A stretch of DNA of 38,906 nucleotides from positions 1-38,906 of the forward strand of contig MCFE01000759.1 of NCBI GenBank assembly GCA_002104905.1, read 5' to 3'. Within the stretch, counting starts at the first letter, position 1, and every line of letters begins with the position of its first letter. The DNA comes from Basidiobolus meristosporus CBS 931.73 (lineage: Eukaryota; Fungi; Basidiobolomycota). The notes under the pieces were generated by a model. It was given only the letters and a program-made list of their open reading frames with translations. It was not told where the DNA came from and did no database searches. A program made the translations under genes and the position numbers. Of the stretch, positions 2,367 to 34,209 are shown piece after piece.

Positions 2367-2371
2367 GAATT

Positions 2372-9781: not shown

Positions 9782-10105
9782 TGTTACGTGCTTAAAGAGT
9801 AATGTCCTTTAGAGAGTACAAAAATGGACAACGTGTATGTTATCTTGTAGATTCAACGGGGTAGTGTAAGAATATCTCTTAAAAGGTTAGGGTGGTGACT
9901 TGGTAGAAATGTATTCAAGCTAATATTTGTTTCTACCGCTCTTCCTGCTTCTAACCAAACTTCTCTCTTTATTTGATTGTTTGATTTGTATTTATACCTT
10001 ATTGTGAGTCTGGTGATTTGTCCTGTTTTGCTTTTCCCTGGCTACTAAGTTGTCTTTGTATGCATTGGTGTCACTTAACATCAAGTGACTTCTTACACTG
10101 TAACA
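9782..10105 (-). mobile_element. Solo LTR, family A
   Basis: Reverse complement of the 2372-2689 type; TG...CA. Confidence 0.88.
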
Positions 10106-10108
10106 AGT

Positions 10109-10433
10109 TGTCATGCTCATAGAGGAAAATCCCAGTTAAGCAGTGTATCTTTTGGGTTTCTGGAGAGGGTAGAGTTGATCCAGGTTGGAAGGAAGAAGAT
10201 ACTTTATTTGTGTACAAACCTGTCTGCAATTGTTATTCATGGTGTGCCTTTTAGACTGTGTGTGCTAATTAGGTTTCAGTGATAAATTAGTGATAAATTG
10301 ATGCTAGATAGGGTTTTGGTCAGAGTAACTCTATTTGGGTGCAGATTGGCATGATTGCCTTATATCCATACAGATGGTTGTCTTTTGCAGGGGGCCTACC
10401 ACTTATCCTAGTGGTATATTTTACCCTGTAACA
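10109..10433 (-). mobile_element. Solo LTR, family B
   Basis: Full-length homolog of 26763-27090 with many CG to TG/CA changes. Confidence 0.88.
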
Positions 10434-10436
10434 AGA

Positions 10437-13400
10437 TGTTATGATATTCAGGTCTGGTTCTCCCACTTTGCTGGTGTAACAAGACCTGTCTTTATTTTTA
10501 CCACAGGATCTGCTTTTAACACAATTCCCAATTGCTTGCATAGACTATTGTCTCAAGTTTGCCCAACAGTGAGCATATAATGAAGCATTATCACATGGTG
10601 ACATAACTATATATGTTGTGATCATCTGAATGTTTGGGTTGGGTTTCAGACTGATAACATTTTCCCCTTCTTCAGTTGATTCTTCTCCTAAAGGATCTTC
10701 AGCTTTAAAATACCAAATTTTCTTTTCAGGAAATGGTCCCCCTTGAAGGGCTACTTGGTGGACCAACATTATCTGTATTTGCTCATCAAGGTCTACTAGC
10801 TGATATGTTGAAGACAGCATAACTCTTCTAATTGTGAATGGTCCCATCCAGTATGGTTGAAACTTCTTGTGGTCTTCCTTACGCATTAAGACTCTTGTTC
10901 CTATCTCAAATTCTTGACTGCTTGCATTCTTGTCATTGTTGTAAAAATTTGTAATTCCACCTAAATACTCACCTAACTTAGTCACTTAGATCATTACCTT
11001 CAAATCCTAGAGAATACTGACCAAATTCCTTGTTGGGATTTACTTCAAATATTTTCACCAAAATATCAGGTACCCAGAATATGAGAATTAGAAAAGTTGT
11101 CCAAACAGCCCCAAACTTTGCACAGATGTTCTTGAGACCTTCCTAACCCTATTTTACATGTTTGTTATGCCAAGACCATGTAAAAGTATAAATACTACTT
11201 TTACATTCAATAAATCATCAAGTGAAAACCACATAATCTACTTGTTCTCCCAATCACTTCCAATATCTCCAAGACTCTTACAACAGTCATAACATAAGAT
11301 CATTTGCTGGCCTTGGTTTTCAAGTTGCTTTAACACTTCTTCCCTCTTATGATCTAGACTTTCCAATTCTCTAATCTGTCATTCTGTTTCATCATTTTCA
11401 TCATTGAGGTCCCAAAGATCTGGATGCAATGTGTCACCAGGTATCATGGGTTCCCTCCCATAGACAAGATAAAAGGGCAAGTATCCTGTAGCTATGCAAG
11501 ACTGTATTTGACATGCAAATAGTGCTTGCTGTACAAAATCATCCCATTTATGTTGTGCCCCCTGAACATAAATTGTCAACATTTGGCTAAAGAGCCCATT
11601 GAAGTGTTCATTGACCCCATTTGTTCTGGGGTGAAAGGCGGATGTTTTTAAATGTTTGATCCCCTGTAATTCTATGTAGTTCTTCATGATACCCTCAATG
11701 AAGTGTTGTCCTCTATCTGTGAGAATTTCCTCAGTGCATCCAAACTGTAAAGTGTTATCTTATACAGGAAATTGCTACTTCTTTTGCGGTAGCTTTTCTT
11801 ATTGATTTGGCAATTGGCCACTTTGTTGTGTGGTCAATTGCCATTATTATCCCCTTGTTACCTCTCCTAGTGTTGGCAAGTCTTCCAATGAAGTCTAAAC
11901 TCCATCTACTAAATGCTGGGACTTGGGGTAACAATGTAGCAATGCAGCCTGCTGCTTCCTGCTTTTTATTAACTGACAGTTAGGGTAGAATTGTATGGCC
12001 AGTGCAATACTTTCTGCCATATTTGGCCACAGGTTAGCATATACAGACAATACAGAATTTCTTGGTCTTGATATTTTCTGCACAATACTTCTTCATTAGC
12101 TTGGAACTTATCAAGTTCTTATAATACTAACTCATTGACTTCCATAGTTGTTCCTTCAGGGAAGGTCTGATTGCAACAGTACTCCACCTACTGCCCAAGA
12201 TGAGGCATTTGTTGTCAAATAAAAGATTCTTGTGAAATCAGTACTTTTCAATACTGGTGTGTTCAATAAAGCTTGCTTCAACCCTTGGGATGCTACTTTA
12301 CAGTTTGCTTCTGGAATTATTTTTGCCACTACATCATCACTGAATGTAGGTGTACTCCATGAGACATAAGTTTTCTTTTTAGCTAAGACAGTGTTTTAAG
12401 CTGCTAATTTGACATCTTGGCTCTTTGTTGGTTGGATTAATAACTTGAGTTTCTTTACCAATACTTCAGAGATGTAATTATCACTTAATCCAATGTCTAA
12501 AATAACTTTCACTGGTTGACTACTAATTTCCACCAGCCACTGAATTACCGGCTTTATTGGTTCTTCTATTTGCCAATTAAGCTCTTCCACCATGTGTAAG
12601 ATATGTTGTTCTTTTATTGTATTCAACATTTCTTCAGAGTCTTCTACTTCCACTTTGAACAGCTTATCCTTCTTACACTTAGAACATTCATCAAATTGAT
12701 GGCCTTCTTTTTTGCAACACAGATTGTGTTTCATGCAATATTCTTTGGTTTTTTGATCCAAGATACTGTCAATATCCAACAGCAGATTTTTGAAGTGGTT
12801 AGTAGAACTACTAACTGTTCCTTTTTGGACTAACTTAGCAAGTTTATATCTGGCTTGCTTTGTAGCTGTTATTGGTTTAAACTCTGTTACTGATTCTTGT
12901 TTGAATTCCCTCCATGTCTCAATTTCATCTTCATGACCTTCATTAGACCTTCTTAAATACAATCTCCACCACAATAATGCTCTTTGGAGCGGACTTGAAG
13001 CGTATTCAACTTTCTGAGACTGACCAACATTTGTGAACTTCATATACTTCTCAACTTGAAATATCCAAGTGTCCACATTTGATTTTCCTTCATAAGTTTC
13101 AGGCTTTGCCAACTTTACCCAATTAGATTCCGGACTTCCATATGCCTTCAAAATATCTTCTTTTGTAAGCAAATCTTCTTGTGCACTATATTGTGCCTTC
13201 AGCCACTGGTTCTCTTCCTTTAATTCTTGTAATTGCTCTCTTAACAATGCACTTAAGTCTTCACCAGGGCTACTACCTTCAGTACTCTTACTAGTACTCA
13301 TCTTCTCTTCTTTTTCCAGAGGATTTACAATGAATTGTTGCTACCAGATGTTATGATATTCAGGTCCGGTTCTCCTACTTTGCTGGTGTAACAAGGTCTG

Positions 13401-13525
13401 TTTTTATTTTTAGCGCTGGATCTGCTTTTAACACAATTCCCAATTGCTTGCATAGAATATTGTGACATAACTACTTATGTCATGATCATCTGAATGTACT
13501 GTTTGGGTTTCAGACTATTGTAACA
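10437..13525 (-). mobile_element. Internally deleted Ty3/gypsy element (family C): gag, partial PR, RT deleted, RNase H and IN remnants; 11 bp upstream of tRNA copy 5
   Basis: LTRs 10437-10659 and 13349-13525 (the latter with a deletion); PBS TGGTAGCAAC; PPT next to 10660; gag ORF 12396-13301; IN ORFs 11379-11687 and 10545-10935. Confidence 0.88.
10937..11285 (+). mobile_element. Solo LTR (family I) nested in the family-C integrase
   Basis: TGTTGT...ACAACA with 5-bp TSD GTCAT; removing it restores the in-frame QMILCYDKNAS; TATAAATA and AATAAA inside. Confidence 0.85.
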
Positions 13526-13536
13526 AAAATGTAGAG

Positions 13537-13607
13537 GCGCTGTTAGTACAGTGGTAGAATTGAAGCTTCCCAAGCTTTAGCCCTGGGTTCAATTCCCGGA
13601 CAGCGCA
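13537..13607 (+). tRNA. tRNA-Gly(CCC), copy 5 (4 substitutions; function doubtful)
   Basis: All four differences are CpG transitions (GCGCTGT, CCCTGG, TTCAATT, ACAGCGC); the B-box TTCGA is hit. Confidence 0.8.
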
Positions 13608-14173
13608 TCACCTTTTTCATTTAATCAATGGCATTCCTTGAACCATCACACTACCTCCCAAATTTTGGAGCAACTTTAGAATTTCCAGTAGAAGGGAATC
13701 CATGCACTTTTACCATTTCAACGCCTGTTTTCTGTACCATCAAAGTGAAGAGATTTAAATTTATGAATCATCAATCTTCCAAAAACACACTGGACCAATT
13801 GAAATAATAGGTCAAAATGTGTATGTTTGTAATAGAGTAGTAAGTTAAAGAGCAGAGTGGCCTTGGTATTCTGGTAAACTTAAGGATCAACTGAGCACAA
13901 GTTCCATCAGAGCCCTAAAACTAGGAAATATTGCGGAAACCCACAATAATGGCAGAAATCATTCCGAATCTTGAAGGAGCTATGTAATTGACAAGAAAAA
14001 TGAAGTTGGTGTATTTTGAGCACAAACGGGTCAACGCTGAGATCACCCAACTAGGCTTTGATCCACCGGTGATTTTACAGTTTCTCCAAATGTTGTGTTT
14101 TGATGGATATGATATACTCTTGGTTGTACGGTATTCATTTTTGGAGTGCCTGTAAACGGGAGCAAAAGATTGT
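13608..14173. repeat. 566-bp spacer between convergent tRNAs; reverse complement of 27172-27737
   Basis: Same length and near-identical in opposite orientation; differences mostly CpG transitions. Confidence 0.9.
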
Positions 14174-14244
14174 TGCACCGTCCAGGAATCAAACCCGGGG
14201 CTAAAGCTTGGGAAGCTTCAATTCTACCACTGTACTAACGGCGC
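14174..14244 (-). tRNA. tRNA-Gly(CCC), copy 6 (3 substitutions; function doubtful)
   Basis: All three differences are CpG transitions, including the B-box. Confidence 0.8.
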
Positions 14245-14255
14245 CTCTGTATTTG

Positions 14256-17200
14256 TGTTATGAAATCCAGGCCAGTTCCTGTCCTTCTGTTTGGTGTAAC
14301 AAGGTCTGTCCTTTATTTTAGCATAGGATCTACTTTTTATACATTTCTTGATCATTTGCATACAACTTGTCTTACTTTAGCCCATCAGTCTTTGACCATC
14401 TTTGATGATTTTTGGTGTTGATGCATCTCTATACGCAACAACTTGCTGCCTGTTCTGGTTGGGATTCAGACTTTCATAACATTTTCCCCTTCTTCATTTG
14501 ATTCTTCTCCTGAAGAATCCTTGTCTTTATGGTACCAAACCTTCTTTTTGGGGAATGGTCCGCCTTGCAATGCTATTTTTAGTCTATCTTGGTGGGCTAG
14601 CGTTTTCTGAACTTGGCCACTCATATCTACAAGCTGATATGTTGAGAATGGCATTATTCTACTTACAACAAATGGGCCCATCTAGTACGGTTGAAACTTC
14701 TTGTGGTCCTCCTTTTGTATTAGAACCTTTGTTCCAACTTCCAGCTCTTGGTCACCTACATTTTTATTGTATTGCAATTTCATTTGTTGACCTTGACTTT
14801 CAAGTCTTTTTATCACTTCCTCTTGCTTGTGGCCTAACGCCTCCAATTCTTGTATTCTCCATTCTGCTTTATTGCCTTCATTGTTGAGATTCCAGAGGTT
14901 TGGCTGTACTGTGTCACCTGGGATTTTTGGCTCTCGTCCATATACTAAGTAGAAGGGTGAATACCCTGTAGCTACATGGCATTGTATTTGACGTGTAAAA
15001 AGTGCCTGTTGCACGAATTGTATTGTTGCAAGTATTCTATCCAATGCAGCATTCTTCTTGATAAGGTTTTTTGAGTATTAACAAATCTTAGACTTGCATG
15101 ATATGTCCAGATAATACACTTTTTTCCTTCTAGGTAGCATTGCCACACTTTCAAACAGACAATTATTGCTAATAACTCTTTTTTGTGTGTTGGATATTTA
15201 TGTTCTGCTGCTGAGAGTTTTCTACTTTTGAACGCAATTGGATGCTCCTGTTTGTCCTGATATTGTGACAGTACTCCCCCTATGGCCCATAGTGAAGCAT
15301 TGGTTGTTAAATAGAAGGTTTTTGAATAATCCAAGCTTCTCAACACTGGGGCATTTACTAATGCAACCTTCAACTGTTGGAATGCAACTTCACATATTTT
15401 TGACCAAGTGCATGTCCTTTCTTGCTTCAGTAAGTCCATCAGTGGTGCTGCTATCTGTGCAAAGCCTGCTATAAACTTTTGGTAATATGACGCTAACCCT
15501 AGAAACAATTGTAGCTTGGTTATTGAGTTTGGGTATGGCCACTCTTCTATTTTCTTTACTTTCTTATTGTCAACTTTCAGGCCTTCTGTGGTAATCACAT
15601 GTCCTAAATATTCAATTTCTTTTGTATTGAACTGACATTTTTCCTTGTTTGCTACTAATTTTTCTCTTTGCAAAATATCAAAGACAGTTCACAGATGGTC
15701 TTGATGTTCTGCTAGTGTTTTGCTATATATTAATATATTATCTAGGTATACTAATTTAAATTGATCTAGATATTGATGAAAAATGCTATTCATCAATGTC
15801 ATTAAGGTGGCTAGTGTGTTGGTGAGTCCAAAACTCATTACCACAAACTTGTAATGGCTGTAGCATGTGCAGAATGCTGTTTTCTCATTATCACCTTCTT
15901 GAATTCAGATTTGGTAATAGCCGCCTTTTAGATCTATCTTTGAAAACACCCTTGCATCATTCAGGTTGTCAAACAGTTTGTCAATTTGGGGGAGTGGGTA
16001 CTTGTTTTTGATTGTTGCTGAATTTAGGGCTTGATAGTCCACACACAAGCAAAGTGACCCATCCTTCTTCTTAACAAACAATACCGGTGCTTCAAACAGC
16101 AATTTACTTGGTCTTATATAACCTTTCTCTAACAATTCAGCTAATTGTTTTTTTAATTCTTGTAGCCCCAATGGACTCATCCAGTAAGGCTGTTTTGACA
16201 CCAGTGAGCTGCTTTCTAGATGAATTTTGTGATCCACACTTCTTTTTGGTGGTGAGCCTTTGAGTACTGTGAACACATCTTGGTACTCATCCAAGATACT
16301 TTGGATATCCTGCATGTTGTTGGTTTGCTTGGTGTCTTCATCTAGAATGCTGTATATAAATTCAACATTGCTTTTGTCTACTTTCCTTGTTGCTTTAGAA
16401 AGTTGTGACTTTGTAATTACAAGTACCTCCTCTTCTTTTAGCAGTTCTGTGTTTGGTTTACAGATTACCTGCTGCCTCCCTTCCTTATATACTGCCACTT
16501 CTTGTGTTTGCCAATTGATGACAGGATTTTGTTTGTACAGCCATGATTGTCCTAAAATTACATTGAAGCTTGCATTGGTAATTATTTTTGCAACCACTTC
16601 ATTGCCGTATGTTGGAATGCTCCATTGAAAGTTTGTTTCACTCCCAATTTGTATGGGGCTTTGTGCCACCAACTTTATATACTTTTTTCTAGTTGGTTGT
16701 ACTATAAGCTTCAGCTGCACTGCCAACTTTTTGGATATAAAGTTATCTCTTGCACCACTGTCTAGGATAATCTTCACAGGGCAGTTGTTTACTTGGGCTA
16801 CCCATTGAACAATTGGTTGTGTCTGCTCCTCCTTTTGCTTGTTAAATTGATCCACCATATGTATAATATGATGGTCCTGTATTTCATTCAAGGTTTCTTC
16901 AGTGTCCTCATTATCCTGTTCAGTAGCTTTACTTTTCTTCCATTTGGGGTACTCAAAAAATCTATGACCTTTCTTATTGCACTTAAAGTACAAGTTATGT
17001 TTGATGCAATACTCCTTATCTTTTTGCTTTGGTGTAGACTTCTTGTCAGCTTCATATGCTTCTTTTTTTGTGCTGTGTACATTATCAAACATAATCTGGT
17101 CATATCTTTCTGCAAACCTGTGGGCCTCTTTAAATGAGCTAGGATCTTGAAGCTTCACTTCTTTCCTAGTGGACTTTTGGAGTCCATGTACATATTGATC

Positions 17201-18032
17201 CAGTATTTCATCTTCCAATATTCCATCAATTTCTAGTAGAATACTTTTGAATTCATTGGTATAGCTGCTAACTATTCCCTTCTTAACTAGCTGTGCCAGT
17301 TTATCTCTAGCATGTTTAGTTGCTGTCACAAGCTTGAATTCTGCCTTCAATTCTTGCTTAAACTGGTTCCACTTTTCAATTTCAACTTCAAGTCCTTCTT
17401 GAACACTCTTCATGTGAGACCTCCACCACAATAGCGCCTGTCCCCTGAACAGACTTGATGCATAATCAACCATTTGCATCTTACTAACATTTGTGAATTT
17501 TAGGTATTTTTCAGCCTGAAAAATCCAAGAATCCACAATTGACTTCCCATCAAATGTATCAGGCTTTGCTAACTTTACATGACCGGATTCCAAACTTCCA
17601 TATGCCTTCAGAATATCTTCTTTAGTAGGCAACTCTTCCTGTGCACTATACTGTGCTTTTAGCCACTGGTTCTCTTCTTTCAATTCTTGCAATTGCTCTC
17701 ACAGCAATGCATTAATGTCTTCACCAGGGCTGCTTCCTTTAGTATTCTTGCTAGTACTCATTTTCTTGTAGTTTGGAGGATTATTTGTTGTTTTGCTGTT
17801 ACCAAATGTTATGAAATCCAGGCCAGTTCCTGTCCTTCTGTTTGGTGTAACAAGGTCTGTCCTTTATTTTAGCATAGGATCTACTTTTTATACATTTCTT
17901 GATCATTTGCATACAACTTGTCTTACTTTAGCCCATCAGTCTTTGATCATCTTTGATGATTTTTGGTGTTGACGCATCTCTATATGCAACAACTTGCTGC
18001 CTGTTCTGGTTGCAATTCAGACTTTCATAACA
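14256..18032 (-). mobile_element. Degenerate Ty3/gypsy element (family D): gag-PR-RT-RNaseH, most of IN deleted; 11 bp upstream of tRNA copy 6
   Basis: 226-bp LTRs at 14256-14481 and 17807-18032 (5 differences); PBS TGGTAACAGC; PPT; ORFs 15905-17692, 14972-15673 and 14466-15044; RT motif YLDN; flanks do not match. Confidence 0.92.
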
Positions 18033-19132
18033 AAAATATGTTATGTACTTAAAGAGTAATGTCCTTTAGAGAGTGCAAAAAGGGATAACGTGTATGTTAT
18101 CTTGTAGATTTGATGGGGTAGTGTAAGAATATCTCTTTAAAAGGTTAGGGGGTGACTTTGTCGGAATATGTTCAAGCTAATATTTGTTCCTACTACACTC
18201 TTCTGCCTATAACCAAAACTCCCTTTTTATTTAGTTGCTTGTTTGGTATTTATACCTTATTGTGAGTCTGGTGATTTGTCTTTGATTTGCTTTTCCCTGG
18301 CTACTAAGTCATCTTTGTATGCGTTGTGGTAGGGTAAACATACCTCCCACAGACAAGTTTATTCATATAGTCATTATGATATACTTATCCATATTTTATC
18401 TTATCAGTATTATCCCATTCTTCTTTTGCCCATATTATCAGTATTATCCTCATATGATGTTTACCCTGATTAGTTATTAGCATTAGTTATCCCAGATGTT
18501 ATTCAGCTTTGTGATCAGTAGATGTATCTATATAAGGCAAGTACCCGCGTCAGTACCCGTGACACATGACCTAGGTCTGTGTTACCATCTCTACCATTTC
18601 AATACCATATATGGTATTTCTATGTTGCACAGGTTTCAGACTACTGATTCCTGATTGGTTGAGAGTGCTGTGCCTTTTAGAACCTTCCAGGACATTCTTG
18701 GCATATTTTTAGCTCATAGTGATGTCATCAAGAATTCCACTGATACCTAGAATCTTCTAGAACCTTGTCATTAGTAATCACTTGGCAATCAGGAAAAGTA
18801 TTTAAGGGAAAGCAATCCCTCATCAATAAATCATCCCTTCTATCAGTAACACTTCTACCTTATTGATTAGCAGTTGATCACTGCACCTGCCTTCCACAGT
18901 GCATCTCAGACCTGCCATCAAGGAGCTTTTCAAGGTAGTGCACAAGACACACAGAGGCCTTTGGAGACACTTGGAGCACCTAGGAAGCTAGAGAAGCAGG
19001 AGCTTTTACCATAGTGACATATTGACAAAGACACCAGCAGTTTAGACACAGAGGTTATTGCACCCATCAGACACCTCACAAACCTTGAGTTGTGTAGCTT
19101 CTCCCAGGAGTACCTCTACACCACCACATATT

Positions 19133-19149
19133 TGGCACCCAACGTGGGG
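19133..19149 (+). other. Primer-binding site, tRNA-Lys(CUU) type
   Basis: TGGCACCCAACGTGGGG versus the canonical Lys1,2 PBS TGGCGCCCAACGTGGGG (one CG to CA change). Confidence 0.85.
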
Positions 19150-19202
19150 GGTTTGACTGAACTGCCCCTAGAAGACTTAAGAAAGAACAAATTATCAAGA
19201 CC

Positions 19203-21059
19203 ATGGATCTACCTTTACCAGGAATGCAAGGAACCCCTTTCTTTGATGGAACTAAAGTCAAAGCTTTCATCAAGAGGTGGGAGCTTTTCTGCAGAGCCCA
19301 CAAAATACCTGAGGCCATTATGGCTGAAGAGATGCCCCCCTACAGCACTGATGAGATCATGCTCTCATTATATGAAAGAAATGATCTGCTGACAAATTGG
19401 ACCCTCTTGAAGAGCTACTTGATTGATGAATATGGAGAGAGACAAGTTGACTACACACTTCAAGACTTGGAGAACTTTGCTTATAGCAAGTTTAAGCTGC
19501 TACCATTGAAAGAATACTTGAGTGGCCTTGAGCAAATTGGAGAGTCACTGAAAGCCCAAGGCATTATCACTGATCTGACTTTATCTGCCTATCTGCTCAG
19601 AGCACTACCAGAAGGCCTGGTTAGAAGGATTGAAAACAATCCTACTGTGAAAGCTATGAGTTCACTGCCTGCATTTCAGTTAGCTAAGCAGATTTTACTT
19701 GCCCCTGAAGAAACCTCACCAATCAGAAAGCTTCTTTCAAGCCCAGGACAAAACCAAGATAGCCAAGACATACTTAATCCCAGCAATCAAAGCACTCAAA
19801 TTCAGGAGCTGACACAGCAACTAGAGAAACTCTCTTTGCTACTTGCCAGCAAAGCATATGGTCAGAAGCCAGTAGAGAAAGAAGTCAAATATACATGCAT
19901 GTGGTGTGACTCTGCCAACCATTCCAAGAGAAATTGCCAAGAGCTTCAGTCATTACTATCCACAGGTGATGTCCTATATAGTCCTCAGGGATACATAGTC
20001 AGTAAGCATGGTGACAAATTATCCACAGCATTTGGACAAGGAGGAATGAGAGTTCACTACAAGCAAGTCACCTCTCATACAAGAAAGGTTCACCTCCATG
20101 GAGAAGAAGATCCTGGCTACTTTGATCCAGCTGAAGTTCTGAACTTTGACTATGAGGATCCCAGAGAGGCCCAAGATCATATAGCTTCAATTTATGCTTC
20201 AAAGAGACACCATCCTGAAAAAATGGCTAATCTAGGCCCAGCAACAAAAGTACCAAGATGTGAGCCAGAAGTTGTGATTGAGAAGAAAGCATCACCCCCA
20301 TTAATTCTACAAGAGTCTGCCAAGACCAACTACTACCACATGCAGCCTAAAGTCAAGCAAAATGGTACCCCAGAGGCTCTGACAAGTCATATACTAGGAA
20401 GCAACATATCAATCAAGGTTGGAGAGCTACTCAGTGTATCACCTTCTGTAAGAAAGACTCTGGATGAGCATATCAGAATAAGAAAGCATCCAATTGAAGC
20501 AACTCAAGGCAACCAGGTCAGGACAGTTCAAGGAAGCCAAGATATCAGTAAGCTGCATCAAAGCCAGAAACACTACTACTCAGTGGCAACTGCAACAACT
20601 ACAGGAGCTGTGCATAATCAAGAAATCCTATGTCATATAGACAGTGGATCTGAGATATGTGTGATGCCTTTGGAGGCTTGGAAACAACTACCATGCAAAG
20701 ACCTATTGCCCATAGACACCAATATCAATTGGAGCATGAAGGATGCCAACTCAGGGCAATCAAAGCTTTTAGGAATTATTCACAGCTTCCCTCTCATCAT
20801 TGAAGGAATACCCCATGAGATCCCAGTATTCATTTGTGCAAAGGCTAACTTTGAATTACTTCTTGGAAGACCATGGGAAGTAAAAGCAAGAGCAACTGCA
20901 GTGAACTACCCAGATGGTTCAGCATGGTATACTATATACTCAGAGAGCCCAGGACTAACAGCAACCTTCTGTGGTGTGGACTCAAACAATATCCGATCAA
21001 TGACATCATGTAGATTTCTATCTCAAGAAAGGACAGGTGGCTTCATTGAGGAAGACTGA
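19203..21059 (+). CDS. 618-aa Gag / CCHC knuckle / DUF4100-like / aspartic protease polyprotein; no RT, RNase H or IN
   Basis: Uninterrupted ORF: PFFDG gag N-terminus, CMWCDSANHSKRNC, ELLSVSPSVR, IDSGSEICVM, LLLGRPW; stop 78 bp before the 3' LTR. Confidence 0.9.
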   Translation: MDLPLPGMQGTPFFDGTKVKAFIKRWELFCRAHKIPEAIMAEEMPPYSTDEIMLSLYERNDLLTNWTLLKSYLIDEYGERQVDYTLQDLENFAYSKFKLLPLKEYLSGLEQIGESLKAQGIITDLTLSAYLLRALPEGLVRRIENNPTVKAMSSLPAFQLAKQILLAPEETSPIRKLLSSPGQNQDSQDILNPSNQSTQIQELTQQLEKLSLLLASKAYGQKPVEKEVKYTCMWCDSANHSKRNCQELQSLLSTGDVLYSPQGYIVSKHGDKLSTAFGQGGMRVHYKQVTSHTRKVHLHGEEDPGYFDPAEVLNFDYEDPREAQDHIASIYASKRHHPEKMANLGPATKVPRCEPEVVIEKKASPPLILQESAKTNYYHMQPKVKQNGTPEALTSHILGSNISIKVGELLSVSPSVRKTLDEHIRIRKHPIEATQGNQVRTVQGSQDISKLHQSQKHYYSVATATTTGAVHNQEILCHIDSGSEICVMPLEAWKQLPCKDLLPIDTNINWSMKDANSGQSKLLGIIHSFPLIIEGIPHEIPVFICAKANFELLLGRPWEVKARATAVNYPDGSAWYTIYSESPGLTATFCGVDSNNIRSMTSCRFLSQERTGGFIEED

Positions 21060-21988
21060 GAGAGCACTTTGTTCTCCAAACTTACAGTGGTTAGCTAAAA
21101 AGTTCCCTGAAACTTTTTAGCTCAAGTGGGGGGTGGATGTGGTAGGGTAAACATACCTCCCACAGACAAGTTTATTCATATAGTCATTATGATATACTTA
21201 TCCATATTTTATCTTATCAGTATTATCCCATTCTTCTTTTGCCCATATTATCAGTATTATCCTCATATGATGTTTACCCTGATTAGTTATTAGCATTAGT
21301 TATCCCAGATGTTATTCAGCTTTGTGATCAGTAGATGTATCTATATAAGGCAAGTACCCGCGTCAGTACCCGTGACACATGACCTAGGTCTGTGTTACCA
21401 TCTCTACCATTTCAATACCATATATGGTATTTCTATGTTGCACAGGTTTCAGACTACTGATTCCTGATTGGTTGAGAGTGCTGTGCCTTTTAGAACCTTC
21501 CAGGACATTCTTGGCATATTTTTAGCTCATAGTGATGTCATCAAGAATTCCACTGATACCTAGAATCTTCTAGAACCTTGTCATTAGTAATCACTTGGCA
21601 ATCAGGAAAAGTATTTAAGGGAAAGCAATCCCTCATCAATAAATCATCCCTTCTATCAGTAACACTTCTACCTTATTGATTAGCAGTTGATCACTGCACC
21701 TGCCTTCCACAGTGCATCTCAGACCTGCCATCAAGGAGCTTTTCAAGGTAGTGCACAAGACACACAGAGGCCTTTGGAGACACTTGGAGCACCTAGGAAG
21801 CTAGAGAAGCAGGAGCTTTTACCATAGTGACATATTGACAAAGACACCAGCAGTTTAGACACAGAGGTTATTGCACCCATCAGACACCTCACAAACCTTG
21901 AGTTGTGTAGCTTCTCCCAGGAGTACCTCTACACCACCACAGCGTTGATGTCACTTAACATTGAGTGACTCTTTACTATGTAACAAGT

Positions 21989-24900
21989 TGTTACGCTTGT
22001 AGAGGGAAATCCTGGTTAAGCAGTATATCTCTTGGGATTCCGGAGAGGGTAGAGTTGATCCAGGTTGCAAGGAAGAAGATACTTTATTTGTGTACAAGTC
22101 TGTCTGCAATTGTTATTCATAGTGTGCTTTTTATACTGTGTGTGCTAAATTAGGTTTCAGTGATAAATTGGTGATAAATTGGTGCTAGATAGGGTTTTGG
22201 TTCGAGTAACTCTATTTGGGTGTAGATTGGCGTGATTGCCCTTATATCTGTACAGATGATTGTCTTTTGGCGGAGTACCTACCACTTATCCTACAGGTAT
22301 ACTTTTCCCTGTAACAAATGGTGGGCTCCAGGAGATTGACTCCTGTCAATTGTGGACTTACTCATGCCATGTGCGTGCTGAGTTACCAGATTCATTAACC
22401 TCTGGGACTAGTATCCGGATGTCATGTGCTGGGCATAGATGATCAATGTTTGCAATGTAGGTTGTCCCTTCCCAACCAATTTGTTTGATCATGTATGCAT
22501 CATTTGGAAGGCAGTGTTTTATCTTCCATGGGCCATTCCAACGGCATGCAAACTTGTGGGGTCATTGATTTGGTACTATAAAGCGTAAGACTTGATCTCC
22601 TACCTTGAATGTGAATTTTATTGCAACCTTGCATTGCAACTGGCTCCTTTGGTCACCACTTTGTTGTGCTCTATATGCCGCTTCTTGTCTTGCTGTAGCT
22701 AGCAAGTGGTCAATAGCCTGCATTCTTTGCTGTAGGTCTGTTTCCCAGTCTTGTCCCGGGGTTGCTACCCAGTTTGCTGGTGTGTTTAACTCATAGCCAT
22801 ACAATAGGTAGCTTGGTGTGCAACCTGTTTCTTCATTCTTCATTGTATGGCAAATGAACAATGCTTTCTGCAAGTGCTTGTCCCATTCCTGTGAGTGGTT
22901 GCCAATTTTTCCTATTATTTTCTTCAGGTTTTGATTTAAGCGTTCTACCTGTCCATTGCTTTGTGGTTGATATGGTGTGCTGTGACATTCCCAAATGTTT
23001 AGTGTGGTAAGCACAGCTTTGAAAGCATTGTTCACAAAATGGCTGCCGTTATCACTGAACACCTGCTTTGGACATCCATATAGTGGCACAATCTTGTTTA
23101 GAAAGAAGTCAACTACCACTGCTGCATTTGCATCTTGGCAAGCTTGGCCATTGGCCATCTGGTGGCATAATCTATACCTGTGAGAATATAGCAATTTTCT
23201 CTGCCGGTTTGTTCTAGAGGCCCCACAAAGTCTAGTCCCAGGATATCAAATGGGTTTGTAGCCATCACTATGGGTTTTACTGGGATTGCCTTGGCTGGTT
23301 GGTTTTGGACTTGTTGACATTCCCCACAGTTGGCCACCGCCCATCGGACTATCTCATATAGCTGTGGAGCTGAGTACCTTTTGCGTACTATTTCCCATGT
23401 ATGTTCCACTCCAAAGTGCTGTTGTTTGTGTATTTCTTGCACCTCTACCTTGCCTTGGCCTTGAGGTAAAACTTCTTGACCTGGGTGTTTTCTCAAGAAT
23501 AGCCAGTTCTCTTGGTATATGAACTTCCTGGCGTATTTCCTGATCCTTCTTTGGATTTCTGCAGTGTGACCTTTGGGTATATTCCCTTTGCCAAGTATTG
23601 TAGTGTAGCATAGTAATATTCCAGTGATAAACCTTGAATATTTCTAATCGGCGTTCTTGCGCTGTCTTGTCCTGGCCCTCTATTATCAGTATTCTTGAAA
23701 GTGCATCGGAGGGGTTTTGTTTGCCTTGTCAATATTGGATACTGAAATCATAATCCATCAAGTACATTGACCACCTAGCAATCCGGCCCACTAGGTTGGG
23801 CTGATTGAAGATCAATATAAGGGCTTGGTGGTCAGTAAAAAGGTAAAATGGTGTCCATATAGATAGTGTTGGAAATGTTTTATGGCCCATACTACCGCTA
23901 GTCCTTCAAGGCATGTACTAGAGTAATTTTGTTCCGCTCCTTGTAATTGCTTGCTAGCATAATATATAACCTGTTCCTTCCGTCCAATGATTTCTGCAAT
24001 AGGATTGCCCCTAGTCCTTGTTTTGAGGCGTCAGTTGTGAGAATGAAAGGTGTCTTGAAGTCTGGATAGGCCAAAAATGATGCATGAGTTATCTTGTCCT
24101 TCAGGGTGTCAATGCTTCTTGCTGGCTAATGTCCCAGACAAAAGATTTTGTTTTCTTAATCATAGATGTCTGTGGGTACGCAATTGCAGCAAACTGCTTA
24201 ATGTACTTCCTGTAATACCCACAGAATTAACAAAGGATAGGATTTTGTCTTTTCCTCTAGGGGGATGCATGTTCCTAATTGCTGTCACTTTTGCTTCATC
24301 TACCTCAATTCCCTCTTTTGAAATCACATGTCCCAAATACTTCAGCTGTTTCTTTGCAAAGGAACATTTTTTGATTGCAATTTGATTCCTGAGCTCTGTA
24401 GTTTGCTCAGGCTATCCAAAGGTCTTTCAGATGTTGCTCTAATGTTGGGGAGAATACTAGAACATTGTCAATAAATATCAGCACCAATTTCCATAACTCC
24501 TCCCAAAATATTGTGTTCATGGCCATTGGAAGGTAGCCGGGGCATTCATGAGCCAACGGCATGACTTTGTACTCAAAGTACCCTATTTGGTTATGAAAGC
24601 AGTTTTCTCAATTGATGACGGTTCCATCTTGATCTGCCAGTAGCTGGAAGTTCCATCCAATGTGCTGAAATATTGGGCATCTTGGAGGGTATCCAGGAGC
24701 TCATGCACATAGGGAAGTGGGTAAGCATCTTGTTTTGTGATTGAGTTGAGATGTTGGTGATCAACACAGAATTGCTTTGACCCATCTTTTTGTTTACAAT
24801 CATTACTGGAGAGGTCCAAGCAAATATGATGGCTGGATTACTTGCTGACTCAGCATGGCTTCTAATTCTGTCCGTATAATTTTGTTTTCTTTAGGGGAGA

Positions 24901-27090
24901 CACGGTAATAGTTGGATCGTATAGGTCCTTTGCTCCCTGTATCAATGGTGTAGGTGATTCCTTTTATCTGCCCTAGACGCTTCTGTTCTGATGAGAATAC
25001 ATCTGTATATAGAGCCAAAAGGCTATCCAACCCTTCTGGCTGTACTTCCCTTGAACCTTCACTGGACTCAATGGCCAGTGTAGTGGGGTCCAATGTTAAG
25101 AGTGCCACCCTAAGATCCCCATCTTTGTGGTCAAAGAGTTTGTGTGATACATGTATGTTTGTTGTTAGCCGTCCATTGAGGGTGGGGACGGATAACTCAT
25201 TATTGTCAAAGTCTAACCATAGCTTGTGATAGCATATCCAATCCATTCCCAAAATCAGCGGATATGTGTCCTCCTTAGTAATCATTGCTTTGGCTACCAG
25301 GTTATACCGGCATATATTAACTGGCAGTGAAGATATCATTCCTTGTGTTGCTATGGGCTGTCCCCCAAAAGCAATTACTTGCACTGTGGTACCACTTTCT
25401 GGCTTCAATCCCAGTTGTCCTGATAGTTTTTGGGATATCACACTACACATGGCACCAGTGTCTATAATAGCCTCTAAGGTACATCCATTGACTTCAACAT
25501 TGGCTCTAGCATATGTGTAGCCATTCTGTTTACTGCTCTTTGATAAGGTCTGGATTGTTGGGTCTGCAGATTTGCTTGCTTTGGCTACCATGGTAGGGCT
25601 ATTTGCCCAATGAGAGAGCTCCCAGCATAGTTTTGGAGAGTATTGTAACAGATCAGATATTGACAGGCTGATTACTTGCCAACCTATCTTCTCCACAAGG
25701 GGGTTTGAATTATTGTTTTCAGGCACTTCCTCATGGTCAGTCATGTTCCCCATACCCCTGGCTTGCTTCTTTTGCCCCCTCTGGGAGGGGTCTGGCCATT
25801 CCCGTTTTTCAGCAAGGTTTACTGGAATCCCTTCTGGTGATAATGTTTCCTTGCTGTACTCTAGTACATTAATTTTTGGTGGAGTCAGCTCCACAGGTGA
25901 TGGACTTGGAAGCTGAGAAAGGGGAGTCCGGCAAAATTGGGCAATATGCCCTGGTTGGTTGCATCAATAACAGGTACAGGGTGTGGTGCTTCCCAAGGGT
26001 CTTCCACTGTCCTCCTGGGTTTTCTGCAATCGGTCCAAGACATTCATGCACAGTTTCTCAAACTGAGTGGTTAAAGTGTCCATTGGATTGTCAGGGCATT
26101 TGGGTGTGGCAGTTTCCTCCCTTTCCTTATTCTTGTTAAGGCTTCCCTGGATTACTTCATCTTGGAGTACACTGTCATTCTCTGAACCCAATTGTTCCTC
26201 CTCTTCTGCATAGTCTATAACTTCATCTAGTGTAGCTGGTTTTTGTCGTTTTACATCTCTTCGGATAGATGGTTGCAGGGATTCCACCAATATCCATATT
26301 TTCTCCTTCTCAGTCATATCTCCAATGCGGGTTATCAAACGGCACACTTGGGTAGTGATAGCTGCTACTGTCTCATCCTTTCTTTGTCGTATTTGGTACA
26401 ATTCATGTTTCCAAATGTCCCTCCGATCTTCCGTCACAAATTTTTCATTGAATCGCTGCTTGAACTGTTCCCACAAAGTGAAACCTGTCCGGTGACGATC
26501 ATACCATAGGGCAGCATTGTCCTTGAGAAAAGGAGCCACAATCCGAGGAAGTGCTGCTTCTGGCCATTCATTAGCCAGTTGGCACATCTCCACCTCTCGA
26601 ATCCAATCTACTGGATCTTCTGAGGGTTGGCCATGAAACTTTCCGATGGTCACCAGTCGCCGTTCATAGGTGCGGGATTCACTCATATCACTCTGAAATG
26701 AGATTTGTACCCAGCTGTGCTTCTCCAATAGTCAATCTTCTCCCTGGTATGCTCGCCAAAGTTGTTACGCTCGTAGAGGGAAATCCCGGTTAAGCAGTAT
26801 ATCTCTTGGGATTCCGGAGAGGGTAGAGTTGAACCAGGTTGCAAGGAAGAAGATACTTTATTTGTGTACAAGTCTGTCTGCAATCGTTATTCATAGTGTG
26901 CTTTTTATACTGTGTGTGCTAAATTAGGTTTCAGTGATAAATTGGTGATAAATTGGTGCTAGATAGGGTTTTGGTCCGAGTAACTCTATTTGGGTGTAGA
27001 TCGGCGTGATTGCCCTTATATCCGTACAGATGGTTGTCTTTTGGCGGAGTACCGACCACTTATCCTACAGGTATACTTTTCCCTGTAACA
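21989..27090 (-). mobile_element. Full-length but degenerate Ty3/gypsy element (family B), 10 bp upstream of tRNA copy 7
   Basis: 328-bp LTRs at 21989-22316 and 26763-27090 (9 differences); PBS TGGCGAGCATACCAGGGA; gag 25964-26728, PR IDTGA, RT, RNase H, IN HHCC and DDE pieces; many frameshifts. Confidence 0.93.
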
Positions 27091-27100
27091 AAATATAGAT

Positions 27101-27171
27101 GCGCCGTTAGTACAGTGGTAGAATTGAAGCTTCCCAAGCTTTAGCCCCGGGTTCGATTCCCGGACGGCGCA
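27101..27171 (+). tRNA. tRNA-Gly(CCC), copy 7 (intact)
   Basis: Identical to copy 1. Confidence 0.96.
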
Positions 27172-27737
27172 ATGATCTTTTGCTCCCGTTTACGGGCACT
27201 CCGAAAATGAATACCGTACAACCAAGAGTATATCATGTCCATCAAAACACAACATTTGGAGAAACTGTAAAATCACCAGTGGATCAAAGCCTAGTTGGGT
27301 GATCTCAGCATTGACCCGTTTGTGCTCAAAATACACCAACTTCATTTTTCTTGTCAATTACATAGCTCCTTCAAGATTCGGAATGATTTCTGCTATTATT
27401 GTGGGTTTCCGCAATGTTTCCTAGTTTTAGGGCTCTGATGGAACTTGTGCTCAGTTGATCCTTAAGTTTACCGGAATACCAAGGCCACTCCGCTCTTTAA
27501 CTTACTACTCTATTACTAACATACACATTTCGACCTATTATTTCAATTGGTCCAGTGTGTTTTCGGAAGATTGATGATTCATAAATTTAAATCTCTTCAC
27601 TTTGATGGTACGGAAAACCGGCGTTGAAATGGTACAAGTGCATGGATTCCCTTCTACTGGAAATTCTAAAGTTGCTCCAAAATTTGGGAGGTAGTGTGAC
27701 GGTTTGAGGAATGCCATTGATTAAATGAAAAAGGTGA
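27172..27737. repeat. 566-bp spacer between convergent tRNAs; reverse complement of 13608-14173
   Basis: Direct visual alignment. Confidence 0.9.
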
Positions 27738-27808
27738 TGCGCCGTCCGGGAATCGAACCCGGGGCTAAAGCTTGGGAAGCTTCAATTCTACCACTGTACT
27801 AACGGCGC
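27738..27808 (-). tRNA. tRNA-Gly(CCC), copy 8 (intact)
   Basis: Identical to copy 1 (reverse complement); TTTTT downstream. Confidence 0.96.
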
Positions 27809-27819
27809 CTATGTATTTG

Positions 27820-30212: not shown

Positions 30213-30214
30213 AT

Positions 30215-30496
30215 TGCCACCGAGTAAAGAGTCACTCGATGTTAAGTGACATCAAGACGACTCAGTAGCCTGGAAAAAGTAAAAGAGACAAATCACCAGA
30301 CTCACAATAAGGTGTAAATAACAATCAAATAAAGTTCAAGTTTGGTTAGAAGTAGGAAGAGCGGTAGAAACGATTATTACTTTGAATATATTTCTATAAG
30401 TCACCATCCTAACCTTTTAAGAGATATTCTCACACTTCCCCAATCTACGAGATAACATACACGTTATATATTTCCGTACTCTTCGAGTGCGTAACA
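30215..30496 (+). mobile_element. Solo LTR, family A (diverged)
   Basis: GAGTAAAGAGTCACTCGATGTTAAGTGAC start shared with 2039; ends GTAACA. Confidence 0.85.
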
Positions 30497-30499
30497 ATA

Positions 30500-30900
30500 C
30501 CTTGTTGTGGTTAGATCCTTCAAGGCTACAAAGGGGAGAAGATCAAGCGTAACCACTTGAATCGTCAAATAAGAACTGCTTTATTAACTGTGCCTGGCAT
30601 GGTTTATATCATAACCTCTTGTACCTTGTTCTGGGCACTCTGTCCTACATTCCGTGCGATAGTTAATTTTATAGAGACTCGATTCCTGGTAGACCAACTT
30701 TTGTGCTGTACCAACTATTATTGCATGCCATTGTTGTGGTACTAGGGCTTTTCAGCTGTTCAAGCTTCCTGCCATAACAACCAAACCTTCTTTTGGAATC
30801 TTCTTGTATCAATCCCATTGAAATTTATTATACCTTTCATGTCTATTCCCAGCTAGCACTGCCGGGATACTTGCCTTTCGACTACTGCCTTCAGTTTAGG
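30500..30900 (-). pseudogene. Possible very old integrase N-terminal remnant
   Basis: Broken frames give HHCC-like spacing and YLTIQVVTLD, resembling PFDILGLD. Confidence 0.3.
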
Positions 30901-31488
30901 TCTGCTTTCAATTTATGCTTAAAGTATATTTCAGCATTTCTTGTTTTGCCATTTGTATTTGTGCCTTGTTCCGTAAGCGTTTTGCCGATTCGCATCAGGT
31001 TTGACGTTTTTCGGGGATGTTGAGCCCTTGGCGCAATACAATTCCGTGCATTAGGTCATGCTTATGACCTAATACTAGGAGTTCACCGATCTTCCATACT
31101 ATTTTATCTTTGTCATCATCTCGAGCACAAAATATCACCTAATATTCCCGACTCCTTCGGCGACCCAGCACGCCTGACTAAATGCTTGTTCTCGAGGTGA
31201 TGGTCGTATTGACATAGCATTCGATTAGTGTCTAATAAAGGAGTCGCCGATTGAGTTGTGCAGCTACTGCTCGCCTTGTATTTCAGATGGCAGAAATCGA
31301 ACAAGCAATTCGCGAGGTAGTGGTACAGTGTAAAGATGAAGATTTATTAGGATGGATATCAGGCATTGACAGGCTACGTCGTGAGTATATATATAATATG
31401 AATGTTCGTCTGCAAGTATACAAGTGATGTATACCCAGGTTGATTGGTTGAGATGCTACAAGAATTACATACTCAGTGGTGAGAGGAA

Positions 31489-33917: not shown

Positions 33918-34172
33918 TTGGTAAAGTGTAAGGAGATTAGGGAGGAATAATTAGAGCAGAGACAAGAATAGTAACCAACGTCAGCAGCAGCAATGGTATA
34001 TATATCGGTAGAGGCAGATGCCCTCGACTTGCCCAAACTGGATCATTTATCAAGTTAAATTTCTCGGTTTGTTGGAATCCTTTCTAGATTTGGACTAATA
34101 ATTGTGGCATTTGGATGGGATTCCATTAGCGCTCATCGAGATTTTGCTCGCGACGTCTTTGAAAGCACGCTC

Positions 34173-34209
34173 ACGTCATTTATCTAAAAGCGCATCAACG
34201 CCAACGTCA
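34173..34209 (-). promoter_or_regulatory. Two CRE/ATF half-sites (TGACGT) upstream of TPS2
   Basis: ACGTCA at 34173-34178 and 34204-34209, ~255-290 bp upstream of the ATG; motif match only. Confidence 0.3.

What the first reader, a model, noticed from the sequence alone, without database searches (positions are those of the whole stretch)
18325..21941. The same element is almost CpG-free, with its few CpGs at functional positions
Seen (manual count): 8 CpGs in 3617 bp, against roughly 150 expected at ~42% GC (my estimate). Three per LTR cluster in GTACCCGCGTCAGTACCCGTGAC right behind the TATATAA box (18529-18559), one is in the PBS, and one in the 1857-bp ORF. That one is a CGA codon where C to T would create a stop. 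The ORF is otherwise open and the LTRs look identical, so the loss predates this insertion. Inference: a lineage that survived repeated 5mC deamination and now offers almost no CpG target, so it may escape methylation silencing. The retained promoter CpGs may be a transcription-factor site.
Basis: partly seen in the sequence, partly recalled or inferred. Interest (0 to 1): 0.82.

Follow-up and report, generated by a model that had tools for sequence, protein, structure and literature searches.

The report
CpG-free young fungal LTR retrotransposon
A recently inserted jumping gene in the fungus Basidiobolus meristosporus has lost almost all its CG dinucleotides, but it inherited this state from a fast CG-to-TG/CA decay that affects the whole transposon-rich compartment of this genome, so it is not shown to be a private trick for escaping silencing.

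Summary
The count is right. There are 8 CpG in 3617 bp against 157 expected (O/E 0.05), and 1 in the 1857-bp ORF. The two 804-bp LTRs are identical and the ORF is open.

The window is a whole contig of Basidiobolus meristosporus CBS 931.73. A sister contig carries the empty target site, a single GCGT, so the insertion is very young and the CpG loss predates it.

The CpG deficit (-120) is matched by a TpG+CpA surplus (+110). The same protein written in host codons would carry about 88 CpG.

The element is not special in this respect. Neighbouring old transposon blocks have O/E 0.02-0.13, while genes and tRNA-adjacent transposons keep 0.75-0.88. Paired copies show ongoing decay that depends on position. 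It is 20-80 times faster at CpG than elsewhere and strongly favours TCG.

Nine of ten surviving CpG strands in the element are non-TCG, so slow-decay context explains much of their retention. Diverged LTR variants have lost the promoter CpGs.

Escape from methylation is untested. The literature lists DNMT1, UHRF1 and Dim2-like genes for this fungus, but I found no 5mC data.

Other notes of this scan already flagged CpG-poor domains and CpG-centred insertion sites elsewhere in this genome. This copy's GCGT target fits that pattern.

The parts
18321..18324 (+). Left copy of the 4-bp target site duplication, GCGT, centred on a CpG
   Evidence: The sister contig L004 and in-window paralogues (9782-10434; reverse complement of 2038-2376) show one uninterrupted GCGT or its decayed form GCAT / GTGT. 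Empty-site joints 18320 to 21942 were seen in runs X1, X2 and X4.
18325..19128 (+). 5' LTR, 804 bp, with TGTGG...CCACA termini and 3 CpG against 32 expected
   Evidence: It is 100% identical to the 3' LTR.
18529..18535 (+). TATATAA box in the LTR (putative promoter; no RNA evidence)
   Evidence: Sequence read. A second TATA-like TATTTAA at about 18800 and an AATAAA at 18826 leave the U3/R/U5 borders unassigned.
18541..18563 (+). Tandem GTACCCG motif holding the three LTR CpGs (18546, 18548, 18558), repeated at 21354-21376
   Evidence: Diverged LTR variants in runs X2 and X4 read ...GTACCTGTGAC......GTACCCATAAC... and ...GTACTTGCA..., so their CpGs have decayed (tables 5c and 7).
19133..19149 (+). 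PBS-like 17-mer, TGG-initial, 4 nt after the LTR, containing the CpG at 19143. The priming tRNA is not identified.
   Evidence: The only tRNA genes in reach are tRNA-Gly(CCC), and they do not match.
19203..21059 (+). Single ORF of 618 aa: Gag-like N-terminus, CCHC zinc knuckle, DUF4100-like segment and aspartic protease with DSG. There is no RT, RNase H or integrase. It holds 1 CpG (O/E 0.01).
   Evidence: The nearest relatives are Ty3-type Gag-PR-RT-RH-IN polyproteins at 25-28% identity.
20994..20996 (+). The only CpG codon, CGA (Arg). C to T gives TGA; G to A gives CAA.
   Evidence: Its minus strand is the only TCG-context strand left in the element.
21124..21137 (+). Polypurine tract next to the 3' LTR
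   Evidence: Sequence read.
21138..21941 (+). 3' LTR, identical to the 5' LTR
21942..21945 (+). Right copy of the target site duplication, GCGT
18039..18324 (.). Left half of the host repeat (an older LTR, here called X) that was split by the insertion. The right half is 21942-21984.
10001..26250 (.). CpG-poor transposon domain in which the element sits (O/E 0.02-0.3). It is interrupted by a partly decayed tRNA-Gly pair at 13518-14254 and bounded by tRNA-Gly genes at 27100-27808.

Best explanation
The stretch is a very young, non-autonomous Gag-protease LTR retrotransposon of Ty3 ancestry. It belongs to a highly repeated family of Basidiobolus meristosporus. Its near-absence of CpG was inherited from its source copy. 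The family has spent enough time in the transposon-rich compartment of this genome to reach the compartment's mutational equilibrium. In that compartment CpG decays to TpG/CpA 20-80 times faster than other sites change, with a TCG preference. The family keeps producing copies with an open Gag-protease frame, which suggests selection among source copies, though selection was not tested. The most likely cause of the decay (inferred, not shown) is CpG methylation by the DNMT1/UHRF1-type machinery reported for this fungus, followed by deamination. The decay depends on chromatin position, since tRNA-adjacent DNA is spared, and not on repetitiveness. The few surviving CpGs are mostly in slow-decay (non-TCG) contexts. 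The PBS CpG is probably held by complementarity to the primer tRNA. The CGA codon is held by selection or by chance. The promoter cluster may be a protein-binding site, may have been kept unmethylated, or both. Being CpG-free removes the substrate for CG maintenance methylation, but this is a by-product of the decay and is not shown to be an adaptation.
For: Shown by tool results: (1) Counts, identical LTRs and an open ORF. (2) CpG deficit of -120 against a TpG+CpA surplus of +110, with normal GpC. (3) Complete CpG avoidance in all codon contexts, not explained by codon usage. (4) An empty site in the sister contig L004 and in paralogues, and thousands of family pieces at 80-100% identity in runs X2 and X4 whose listed variants restore a CpG at only 1 of 32 sites. 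(5) Neighbouring blocks are equally depleted, while genes and tRNA-adjacent transposons have O/E 0.75-0.88. (6) Decay in place, dependent on position. In element B the inner LTR lost 5 CpG and the tRNA-side LTR lost 0. In the tRNA-spacer duplicate the split is 15 against 2. In the window-versus-L004 block 13462-15019 there are 22 and 8 CpG losses against 26 other differences. (7) TCG bias: 23 of 26 TCG strands decayed against 48 of 125 VCG strands (P 2e-6). Survivors in depleted DNA are 6.8% TCG against 30% in CpG-rich DNA (P 6e-11). (8) Ty3-type relatives in other fungi keep O/E 0.59-0.81, so the depletion is imposed by the host. From the literature: B. meristosporus has DNMT1 (ORX99839), two Dim2-like proteins, UHRF1 and HELLS (PMC10538959). 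The organism was confirmed by a 100% protein match.
Against: No 5mC measurement for this fungus was found, so methylation of these domains is inferred only. As far as I recall, spontaneous 5mC deamination in mammals does not favour TCG. The TCG bias could therefore point to an enzymatic deaminase or a RIP-like process instead. Non-CpG divergence between the two sister contigs is also about 15 times higher in transposon blocks than in the gene block, which plain CpG methylation does not explain. Only 40 of about 190 variant sites from the read lay were visible, and no second full copy of the family could be fetched.
Confidence: 0.7

Rival explanations
1. Adaptive escape. Selection favoured CpG-free variants because they cannot be held silent by CG maintenance methylation. 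The retained promoter CpGs are a needed transcription-factor site.
For: The family is young and abundant. The element offers only 8 methylatable CpGs. The three LTR CpGs sit in a tandem GTACCCG motif just after the TATA box, and the surrounding motif is recognisable in diverged LTR variants. [quoted passage not shown]
Against: Dead, fragmented neighbours are just as CpG-free, so no selection is needed to reach this state. At the measured rates a lineage becomes CpG-free within a few percent of neutral divergence. Diverged LTR variants have lost the promoter CpGs. The host also has Dim2-like enzymes (PMC10538959), and the Neurospora Dim2 enzyme methylates non-CG sites as well (from memory). A young CpG-rich transposon (27893-30212, LTRs 98% identical, O/E 0.81-0.88) also looks recently active.
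Confidence: 0.2
2. A homology-dependent, RIP-like premeiotic hypermutation with a TpCpG preference, as proposed for Pucciniomycotina, removed CpGs from repeated DNA. No standing methylation is involved.
For: There is a strong TCG preference in both decay events and survivors, which matches the TpCpG pattern described in PMC3318451. The CpG to non-CpG rate ratio is very high.
Against: Two LTRs of one element, and duplicated tRNA-spacer units, decayed very unequally according to position. The CpG-rich Gag-integrase transposon shows repeated LTR-like pieces yet keeps O/E 0.81-0.88. The classical RIP signature is absent: TpA O/E is 0.77 and CpA 1.35.
Confidence: 0.15
3. The element arrived by horizontal transfer from a CpG-poor donor genome and is CpG-free for that reason.
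For: No close protein relatives exist in the databases; the best is 28% identity. One distant relative from an unidentified sample has O/E 0.19.
Against: Unrelated families next to it show the same depletion, with decay seen in place. The family has thousands of diverged pieces in the host. The nearest relatives found sit in fungal-type Ty3 polyproteins with a DUF4100 segment and O/E 0.59-0.81.
Confidence: 0.03

Closest known systems
Methylation-driven CpG depletion of transposable elements (vertebrates; Agaricomycotina and Ustilaginomycotina as discussed in Horns et al. 2012, PMC3318451)
   Same: CpG-specific deficit with a matching TpG/CpA surplus, confined to transposon-rich DNA, while genes keep their CpG. 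The host carries a DNMT1-type enzyme.
   Different: The depletion is more extreme (O/E 0.01-0.05, against about 0.2 in vertebrates, a figure from memory). The borders at tRNA genes are sharp. The decay shows a TCG preference. The host is an early-diverging fungus (Zoopagomycota) for which I found no 5mC data.
TpCpG 'RIP-like' hypermutation of repeats in Pucciniomycotina (Horns et al. 2012, PMC3318451)
   Same: C-to-T changes in repeats are concentrated at CpG preceded by T.
   Different: The fungal phylum is different. Here all CpG contexts are eventually lost, and the decay follows position (distance from tRNA genes), not repeat status. Homology dependence is not shown in either case.
ONSEN / ATCOPIA78 of Arabidopsis, whose promoter lacks CG and CHG sites (Cavrak et al. 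2014, PMC3907296)
   Same: An active LTR retrotransposon that offers almost no symmetric methylation sites.
   Different: In ONSEN the LTR promoter is the part free of such sites, and methylation was measured. Here the whole body is CpG-free, yet the only LTR CpGs sit at the putative promoter, and nothing was measured.
Non-autonomous Gag-only or Gag-protease LTR elements (TR-GAG type) derived from Ty3/gypsy elements
   Same: LTRs, PBS, PPT and a Gag-type ORF are retained; RT, RNase H and integrase are missing. The element must be mobilised in trans.
   Different: It keeps a protease domain. The autonomous partner was not found in the window.
Sequence-specific integration of Drosophila ZAM / Tirant-type gypsy elements at CG-rich short targets
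   Same: A 4-bp duplication of a CpG-centred target (GCGT) in CpG-starved DNA.
   Different: Only one insertion was scored here, plus two partial flanks from read contigs. The enzyme is supplied in trans and is unknown.

Membership tests
LTR retrotransposon | Direct long terminal repeats with TG...CA ends, flanked by a short target site duplication | tested here: met
   804-bp identical LTRs with TGTGG...CCACA ends and a 4-bp GCGT duplication. The empty site is present in L004.
LTR retrotransposon | Primer binding site after the 5' LTR and polypurine tract before the 3' LTR | tested here: inconclusive
   A TGG-initial 17-mer lies 4 nt after the LTR, and a purine-rich tract abuts the 3' LTR. 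The matching tRNA was not found.
Ty3/gypsy (Metaviridae) lineage | Gag with CCHC knuckle and a retroviral-type aspartic protease, homologous to polyproteins ordered PR-RT-RH-IN | tested here: met
   CCHC and DSG motifs. Pfam hits are weak: DUF4100 and Asp_protease. There are 114 hits at E<=1e-10, the best at 25-28% identity. Of the 6 top hits scanned, 4 carry RT, and 2 of those carry the full PR-RT-RH-IN order.
Autonomous Ty3/gypsy element | Own reverse transcriptase, RNase H and integrase | tested here: not met
   The ORF stops 78 bp before the 3' LTR. No RT or IN domain is present in any frame of 19129-21137.
5mC-deamination CpG decay of transposons | CpG deficit balanced by TpG/CpA surplus, other dinucleotides normal | tested here: met
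   -120 against +110; GpC O/E 1.03.
5mC-deamination CpG decay of transposons | Host encodes a CpG maintenance methyltransferase | not tested
   Taken from PMC10538959, supplement 1: DNMT1 ORX99839 and UHRF1 ORX90637. The genes are not in this window.
5mC-deamination CpG decay of transposons | The depleted DNA is methylated at its CpGs | not testable with these tools
   No bisulfite or nanopore data could be reached, and no paper with 5mC data for Basidiobolus was found.
Classical RIP (Neurospora type) | C-to-T mainly at CpA, giving TpA excess, CpA/TpG deficit and AT enrichment | tested here: not met
   TpA O/E 0.77, CpA 1.35, TpG 1.28; GC 41.7% against 42.3% for the window.
TpCpG RIP-like hypermutation (Pucciniomycotina) | Excess C-to-T at TCG over VCG in repeats | tested here: met
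   23 of 26 against 48 of 125 (P 2e-6). The TCG share of survivors is 6.8% against 30%.
TpCpG RIP-like hypermutation (Pucciniomycotina) | Dependence on sequence duplication, not on position | tested here: not met
   Equally duplicated LTRs and tRNA-spacer units decay unequally according to position.
ONSEN-like methylation evasion | Promoter devoid of symmetric methylation sites, with measured failure of maintenance methylation | tested here: inconclusive
   The body is nearly CpG-free, but the three LTR CpGs lie exactly at the putative promoter. Methylation and expression were not measurable.

The most novel reading that the evidence does not exclude
The TGTGG...CCACA LTR group is mobilised by an integrase that picks 4-bp targets centred on CpG. 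This copy used GCGT in DNA with only about 1.2% such sites. A CpG-free body would then make the family immune both to CG methylation and to insertions by its own kind. The TCG-biased, position-dependent CpG decay that produced this state would be an undescribed genome-defence mutator of early-diverging fungi, working like the TpCpG process of rust and smut relatives.
Probability: 0.2. Interest if true: 0.75.

Novelty: new member of a known kind. Interest (0 to 1): 0.45.

Why it matters
It gives a clean, datable example of an active retrotransposon lineage that has already run to CpG zero. The example includes an empty allele-like site, identical LTRs and an intact ORF. It also shows that an early-diverging fungus has a two-compartment genome: a transposon interior where CpG decays fast and with a TCG bias, and tRNA-adjacent and genic DNA where CpG is kept. 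Fungal 5mC work has centred on Dikarya, and early-diverging fungi are mostly discussed for 6mA. A culturable Zoopagomycota species with such a strong CpG footprint would be a useful test case for how DNMT1-type methylation, mutation and transposon evolution interact. For the narrow claim of escape from silencing, the result is sobering, because the state can be reached by mutation alone.

Tried and rejected
1. The word-based protein search with the 618-aa ORF found nothing. The exhaustive search found only distant relatives at 28% identity or less. No second copy of the family could therefore be fetched as DNA, and per-copy O/E for the family could not be computed.

2. A metagenome scan with the 19-nt LTR end gave one chance hit in unrelated CpG-rich DNA.

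3. BLAST of the element against the rest of the window and against L003 and L004 found no further copies or fragments. tblastn found no related Gag in the window, so the autonomous partner is not here.

4. No sequencing run on record as RNA holds the element. The transcription start, and hence the position of the GTACCCG motif relative to it, is unknown. The depth figures are sums over contigs and were not used as copy numbers.

5. PBS: no tRNA in reach matches it, and there is no self-complementary match in the LTR at 3 mismatches or fewer.

6. Post-insertion decay followed by LTR homogenisation was rejected. It would need perfect conversion over 804 bp, and it conflicts with the CpG-free variants of other copies.

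7. A findings search by sequence returned nothing.

Full report
**Observation**

The stretch 18325-21941 holds exactly 8 CpG, at 18546, 18548, 18558, 19143, 20994, 21359, 21361 and 21371. Base composition predicts 156.6, so O/E is 0.051. GpC is normal at 0.99.

The two LTRs (18325-19128 and 21138-21941) are 804 bp long and identical. The termini are TGTGG...CCACA and the flanking duplication is GCGT. A TGG-initial PBS-like 17-mer starts 4 nt after the 5' LTR, and a purine tract abuts the 3' LTR.

The single ORF (19203-21059, 618 aa) has a Gag-like N-terminus, a CCHC knuckle, a DUF4100-like segment and an aspartic protease with DSG. It has no RT or integrase.

**How strong the depletion is**

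- In the ORF, none of the 174 codons that precede a G-initial codon ends in C. 36 are expected (P about 3e-18).
- 22 of 23 Arg codons are AGR, and no NCG codon exists.
- The same protein written with host-gene codon usage would carry 88 CpG (range 68-111).
- Permuting the ORF's own synonymous codons gives 32 (range 18-45). One is observed.
- In the unique 2813 bp the CpG deficit is -120 and the TpG+CpA surplus is +110. That is the signature of C-to-T change at CpG on either strand.
- TpA is not in excess (0.77), so this is not classical RIP.

**Organism and context**

The trehalose-phosphate synthase/phosphatase exon at 31489-33276 is 100% identical to a protein of Basidiobolus meristosporus CBS 931.73. 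The window is the whole contig MCFE01000759.1 of assembly GCA_002104905.1.

The window is bimodal for CpG:

| Region | CpG O/E |
|---|---|
| Genes, and transposons next to tRNA-Gly genes | 0.75-0.88 |
| Block 2250-3750 | near zero |
| Block 10001-13000 | 0.05 |
| Block 14250-18324 | 0.13 |
| Focal element 18325-21941 | 0.05 |
| 22-26 kb | 0.2-0.3 |

The depleted blocks are older Ty3-type elements with broken frames. Low CpG is therefore the background of a transposon compartment. It is neither genome-wide nor private to this element. Other first-stage notes of this scan saw the same sharp domains elsewhere in the genome.

**Age of the insertion**

A second contig of the same assembly (MCFE01000087.1, locus L004) is collinear with the window. 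Identity is 99.82% in the gene block, 98.4% over the Gag-integrase element and tRNA pair, and 96.4-97.2% in the transposon blocks.

L004 carries the uninterrupted host repeat with a single GCGT at the insertion point. Two in-window paralogues also show the empty site, one intact and one decayed to GCAT. A third, partial paralogue has GTGT. Contigs of three public runs contain empty-site joints as well.

The insertion is thus younger than the split of the two contigs. Zero differences in 804 bp bounds its per-lineage age at about 0.19% divergence.

**Did the CpG loss precede insertion?**

Yes, for three reasons.

1. If about 22 CpG per LTR had decayed after insertion, each going to TpG or CpA independently, identical outcomes in both LTRs would have P about 1e-7.
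2. Even at the fastest decay measured here (see below), the age bound allows 7-14% loss, not 95%.
3. Runs X2 and X4 hold about 4500 contig pieces each at 80-100% identity, so the family is large and diversified. Of the 32 best-supported variant sites inside the element, only one creates a CpG. In the 5' flank, 3 of 6 do.

Ty3-type relatives in other fungal assemblies (25-28% identity) keep O/E 0.59-0.81. One relative from an unidentified sample has 0.19. The depletion is therefore imposed in this host.

**The decay process around the element**

Three internal comparisons show decay in place.

1. In the neighbouring element B, the LTR facing the transposon interior (21985-22318) has lost 5 CpG relative to its partner next to the tRNA gene (26759-27092), which lost none. 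There are 4 other differences.
2. The tRNA-Gly pair plus spacer at 13518-14254 has 15 CpG-to-TpG/CpA changes relative to its inverted copy at 27091-27827, against 2 in the other direction.
3. Between the window and L004, block 13462-15019 shows 22 losses in the window, 8 in L004 and 26 other differences.

From these counts CpG decays 20-80 times faster than other sites in this compartment. At such rates a lineage reaches CpG equilibrium within a few percent of neutral divergence, so an open reading frame can easily be kept by selection among source copies.

The unequal fate of equally duplicated sequences argues for a position-dependent (chromatin or methylation domain) process with tRNA genes at the borders. 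It argues against a purely homology-dependent one.

**An unexpected bias**

Pooling the polarised events, 23 of 26 TCG strands decayed against 48 of 125 VCG strands (P 2e-6). Independently, only 6.8% of CpG strands surviving in the depleted blocks are TCG, against 30% in CpG-rich DNA (P 6e-11).

This resembles the TpCpG hypermutation reported for Pucciniomycotina (PMC3318451). As far as I recall, it is not what spontaneous 5mC deamination shows in mammals.

It also bears on the claim about functional positions. Nine of the ten strands of the element's five distinct CpGs are non-TCG, so their survival is partly what the mutation bias predicts. The one TCG strand is the minus strand of the CGA codon.

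**The retained CpGs**

- PBS CpG: its position is right, and complementarity to a primer tRNA would preserve it. The tRNA was not identified.
- The three LTR CpGs lie in a tandem GTACCCG motif 6-28 bp after TATATAA. From memory, TTACCCG is the core of yeast Reb1-type Myb sites, so a protein-binding site is a fair lead.
- However, diverged LTR variants in the runs keep the surrounding motif and read TpG or CpA at these places (tables 5c and 7). There is no RNA evidence for the start site.

**Mechanism and the escape idea**

Funabiki et al. 2023 (PMC10538959, source data) list DNMT1, two Dim2-like proteins, UHRF1 and HELLS for B. meristosporus. They list no DNMT3 or DNMT5, and they give no experimental 5mC entry. 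I found no methylome for this fungus.

Methylation followed by deamination is therefore the most likely cause, but it is inferred.

An element without CpG cannot carry CG maintenance methylation. The parallel is ONSEN, whose promoter lacks CG and CHG sites (PMC3907296). Three points count against an adaptive reading here:

- Dead neighbours reached the same state.
- The only LTR CpGs are at the putative promoter, the opposite of ONSEN.
- Dim2-like enzymes and histone-based silencing do not need CpG.

I therefore rate adaptive escape as possible but unsupported.

**Target site**

The duplicated target GCGT is centred on a CpG, in a host repeat where only 1.2% of positions are. Two further 3' flanks of other copies in run X1 read GCGG and GTGC (table 7).

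Earlier notes of this scan report CpG-centred 4-bp targets for LTR families of this genome, including a TGTGG...CCACA group. My single scored event agrees with them but adds little weight.

**Verdict**

The inherited-loss inference is well supported. The element-specific and adaptive parts are not. This is a clear new example of a known kind of process, in an under-studied fungal lineage, with a TCG bias and compartment borders worth following up.

Noticed in passing
window 18321-18324 / 21942-21945; L004:15760-15830: The insertion duplicated a CpG-centred 4-bp target (GCGT) in CpG-starved DNA, where the chance of hitting such a site is about 0.012. Flanks of two other copies in run X1 read GCGG and GTGC. 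This fits earlier notes that the TGTGG...CCACA LTR group inserts at N-CG-N.
   Followed up: partly
window 12053-18326 and 27076-38906 against L004:4823-22240: A sister contig of the same assembly (MCFE01000087.1) is collinear with the window. It lacks the focal element, element B (21985-27092) and an 875-bp piece (30377-31252). Divergence rises from 0.18% in the genes, through 1.55% at the Gag-integrase element, to 2.8-3.6% in the transposon blocks. Non-CpG sites rise too, by about 15-fold, and this is unexplained.
   Followed up: partly
window 13462-16539 against L004:16641-20588: The window haplotype, which carries two extra transposon insertions nearby, lost more CpGs than the sister contig in the shared flanking blocks (22 against 8, and 10 against 2). 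It looks as if the decaying domain had spread or intensified after the insertions.
   Followed up: no
window 335-405, 890-961, 1959-2029, 13537-13607, 14174-14244, 27100-27172, 27738-27808: There are seven tRNA-Gly(CCC) genes, mostly in inverted pairs with a spacer of about 566 bp. LTR ends lie 9-11 bp upstream of the mature tRNA 5' end (for example LTR-A at 14256, LTR-B at 27092 and the X LTR in L004). This is Ty3-like targeting of Pol III genes. DNA next to these tRNA genes keeps its CpG.
   Followed up: partly
window 13537-13607: The tRNA-Gly copy inside the CpG-poor domain differs from the copy at 335-405 at four CpG sites, all changed to TpG/CpA. Some of these lie in stems and the T-loop, so this copy is probably decaying as a gene.
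   Followed up: no
window 27893-30212: A young RT-less element with LTR pieces 98% identical encodes an in-frame Gag-integrase ORF (27964-29964). It keeps CpG O/E 0.81-0.88 directly beside a tRNA gene, in contrast to the CpG-free focal element.
   Followed up: partly
window 18520-19128 (table 2): In the public runs the 3' two-thirds of the LTR is covered by far more contig pieces than the internal region or the first 200 bp of the LTR. This suggests many solo LTRs, or an R-U5 part shared with other subfamilies, possibly the autonomous partner.
   Followed up: no
L004:1-3500: This is another CpG-free block (O/E 0.00-0.12) without long ORFs, beyond the gene cluster on the sister contig. It is not related to the focal element.
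   Followed up: no
L008 (Logan ERR14656589 contig): A distant Gag-PR-RT-RH-IN relative (30% identity) from an unidentified sample also has low CpG (O/E 0.19).
   Followed up: no
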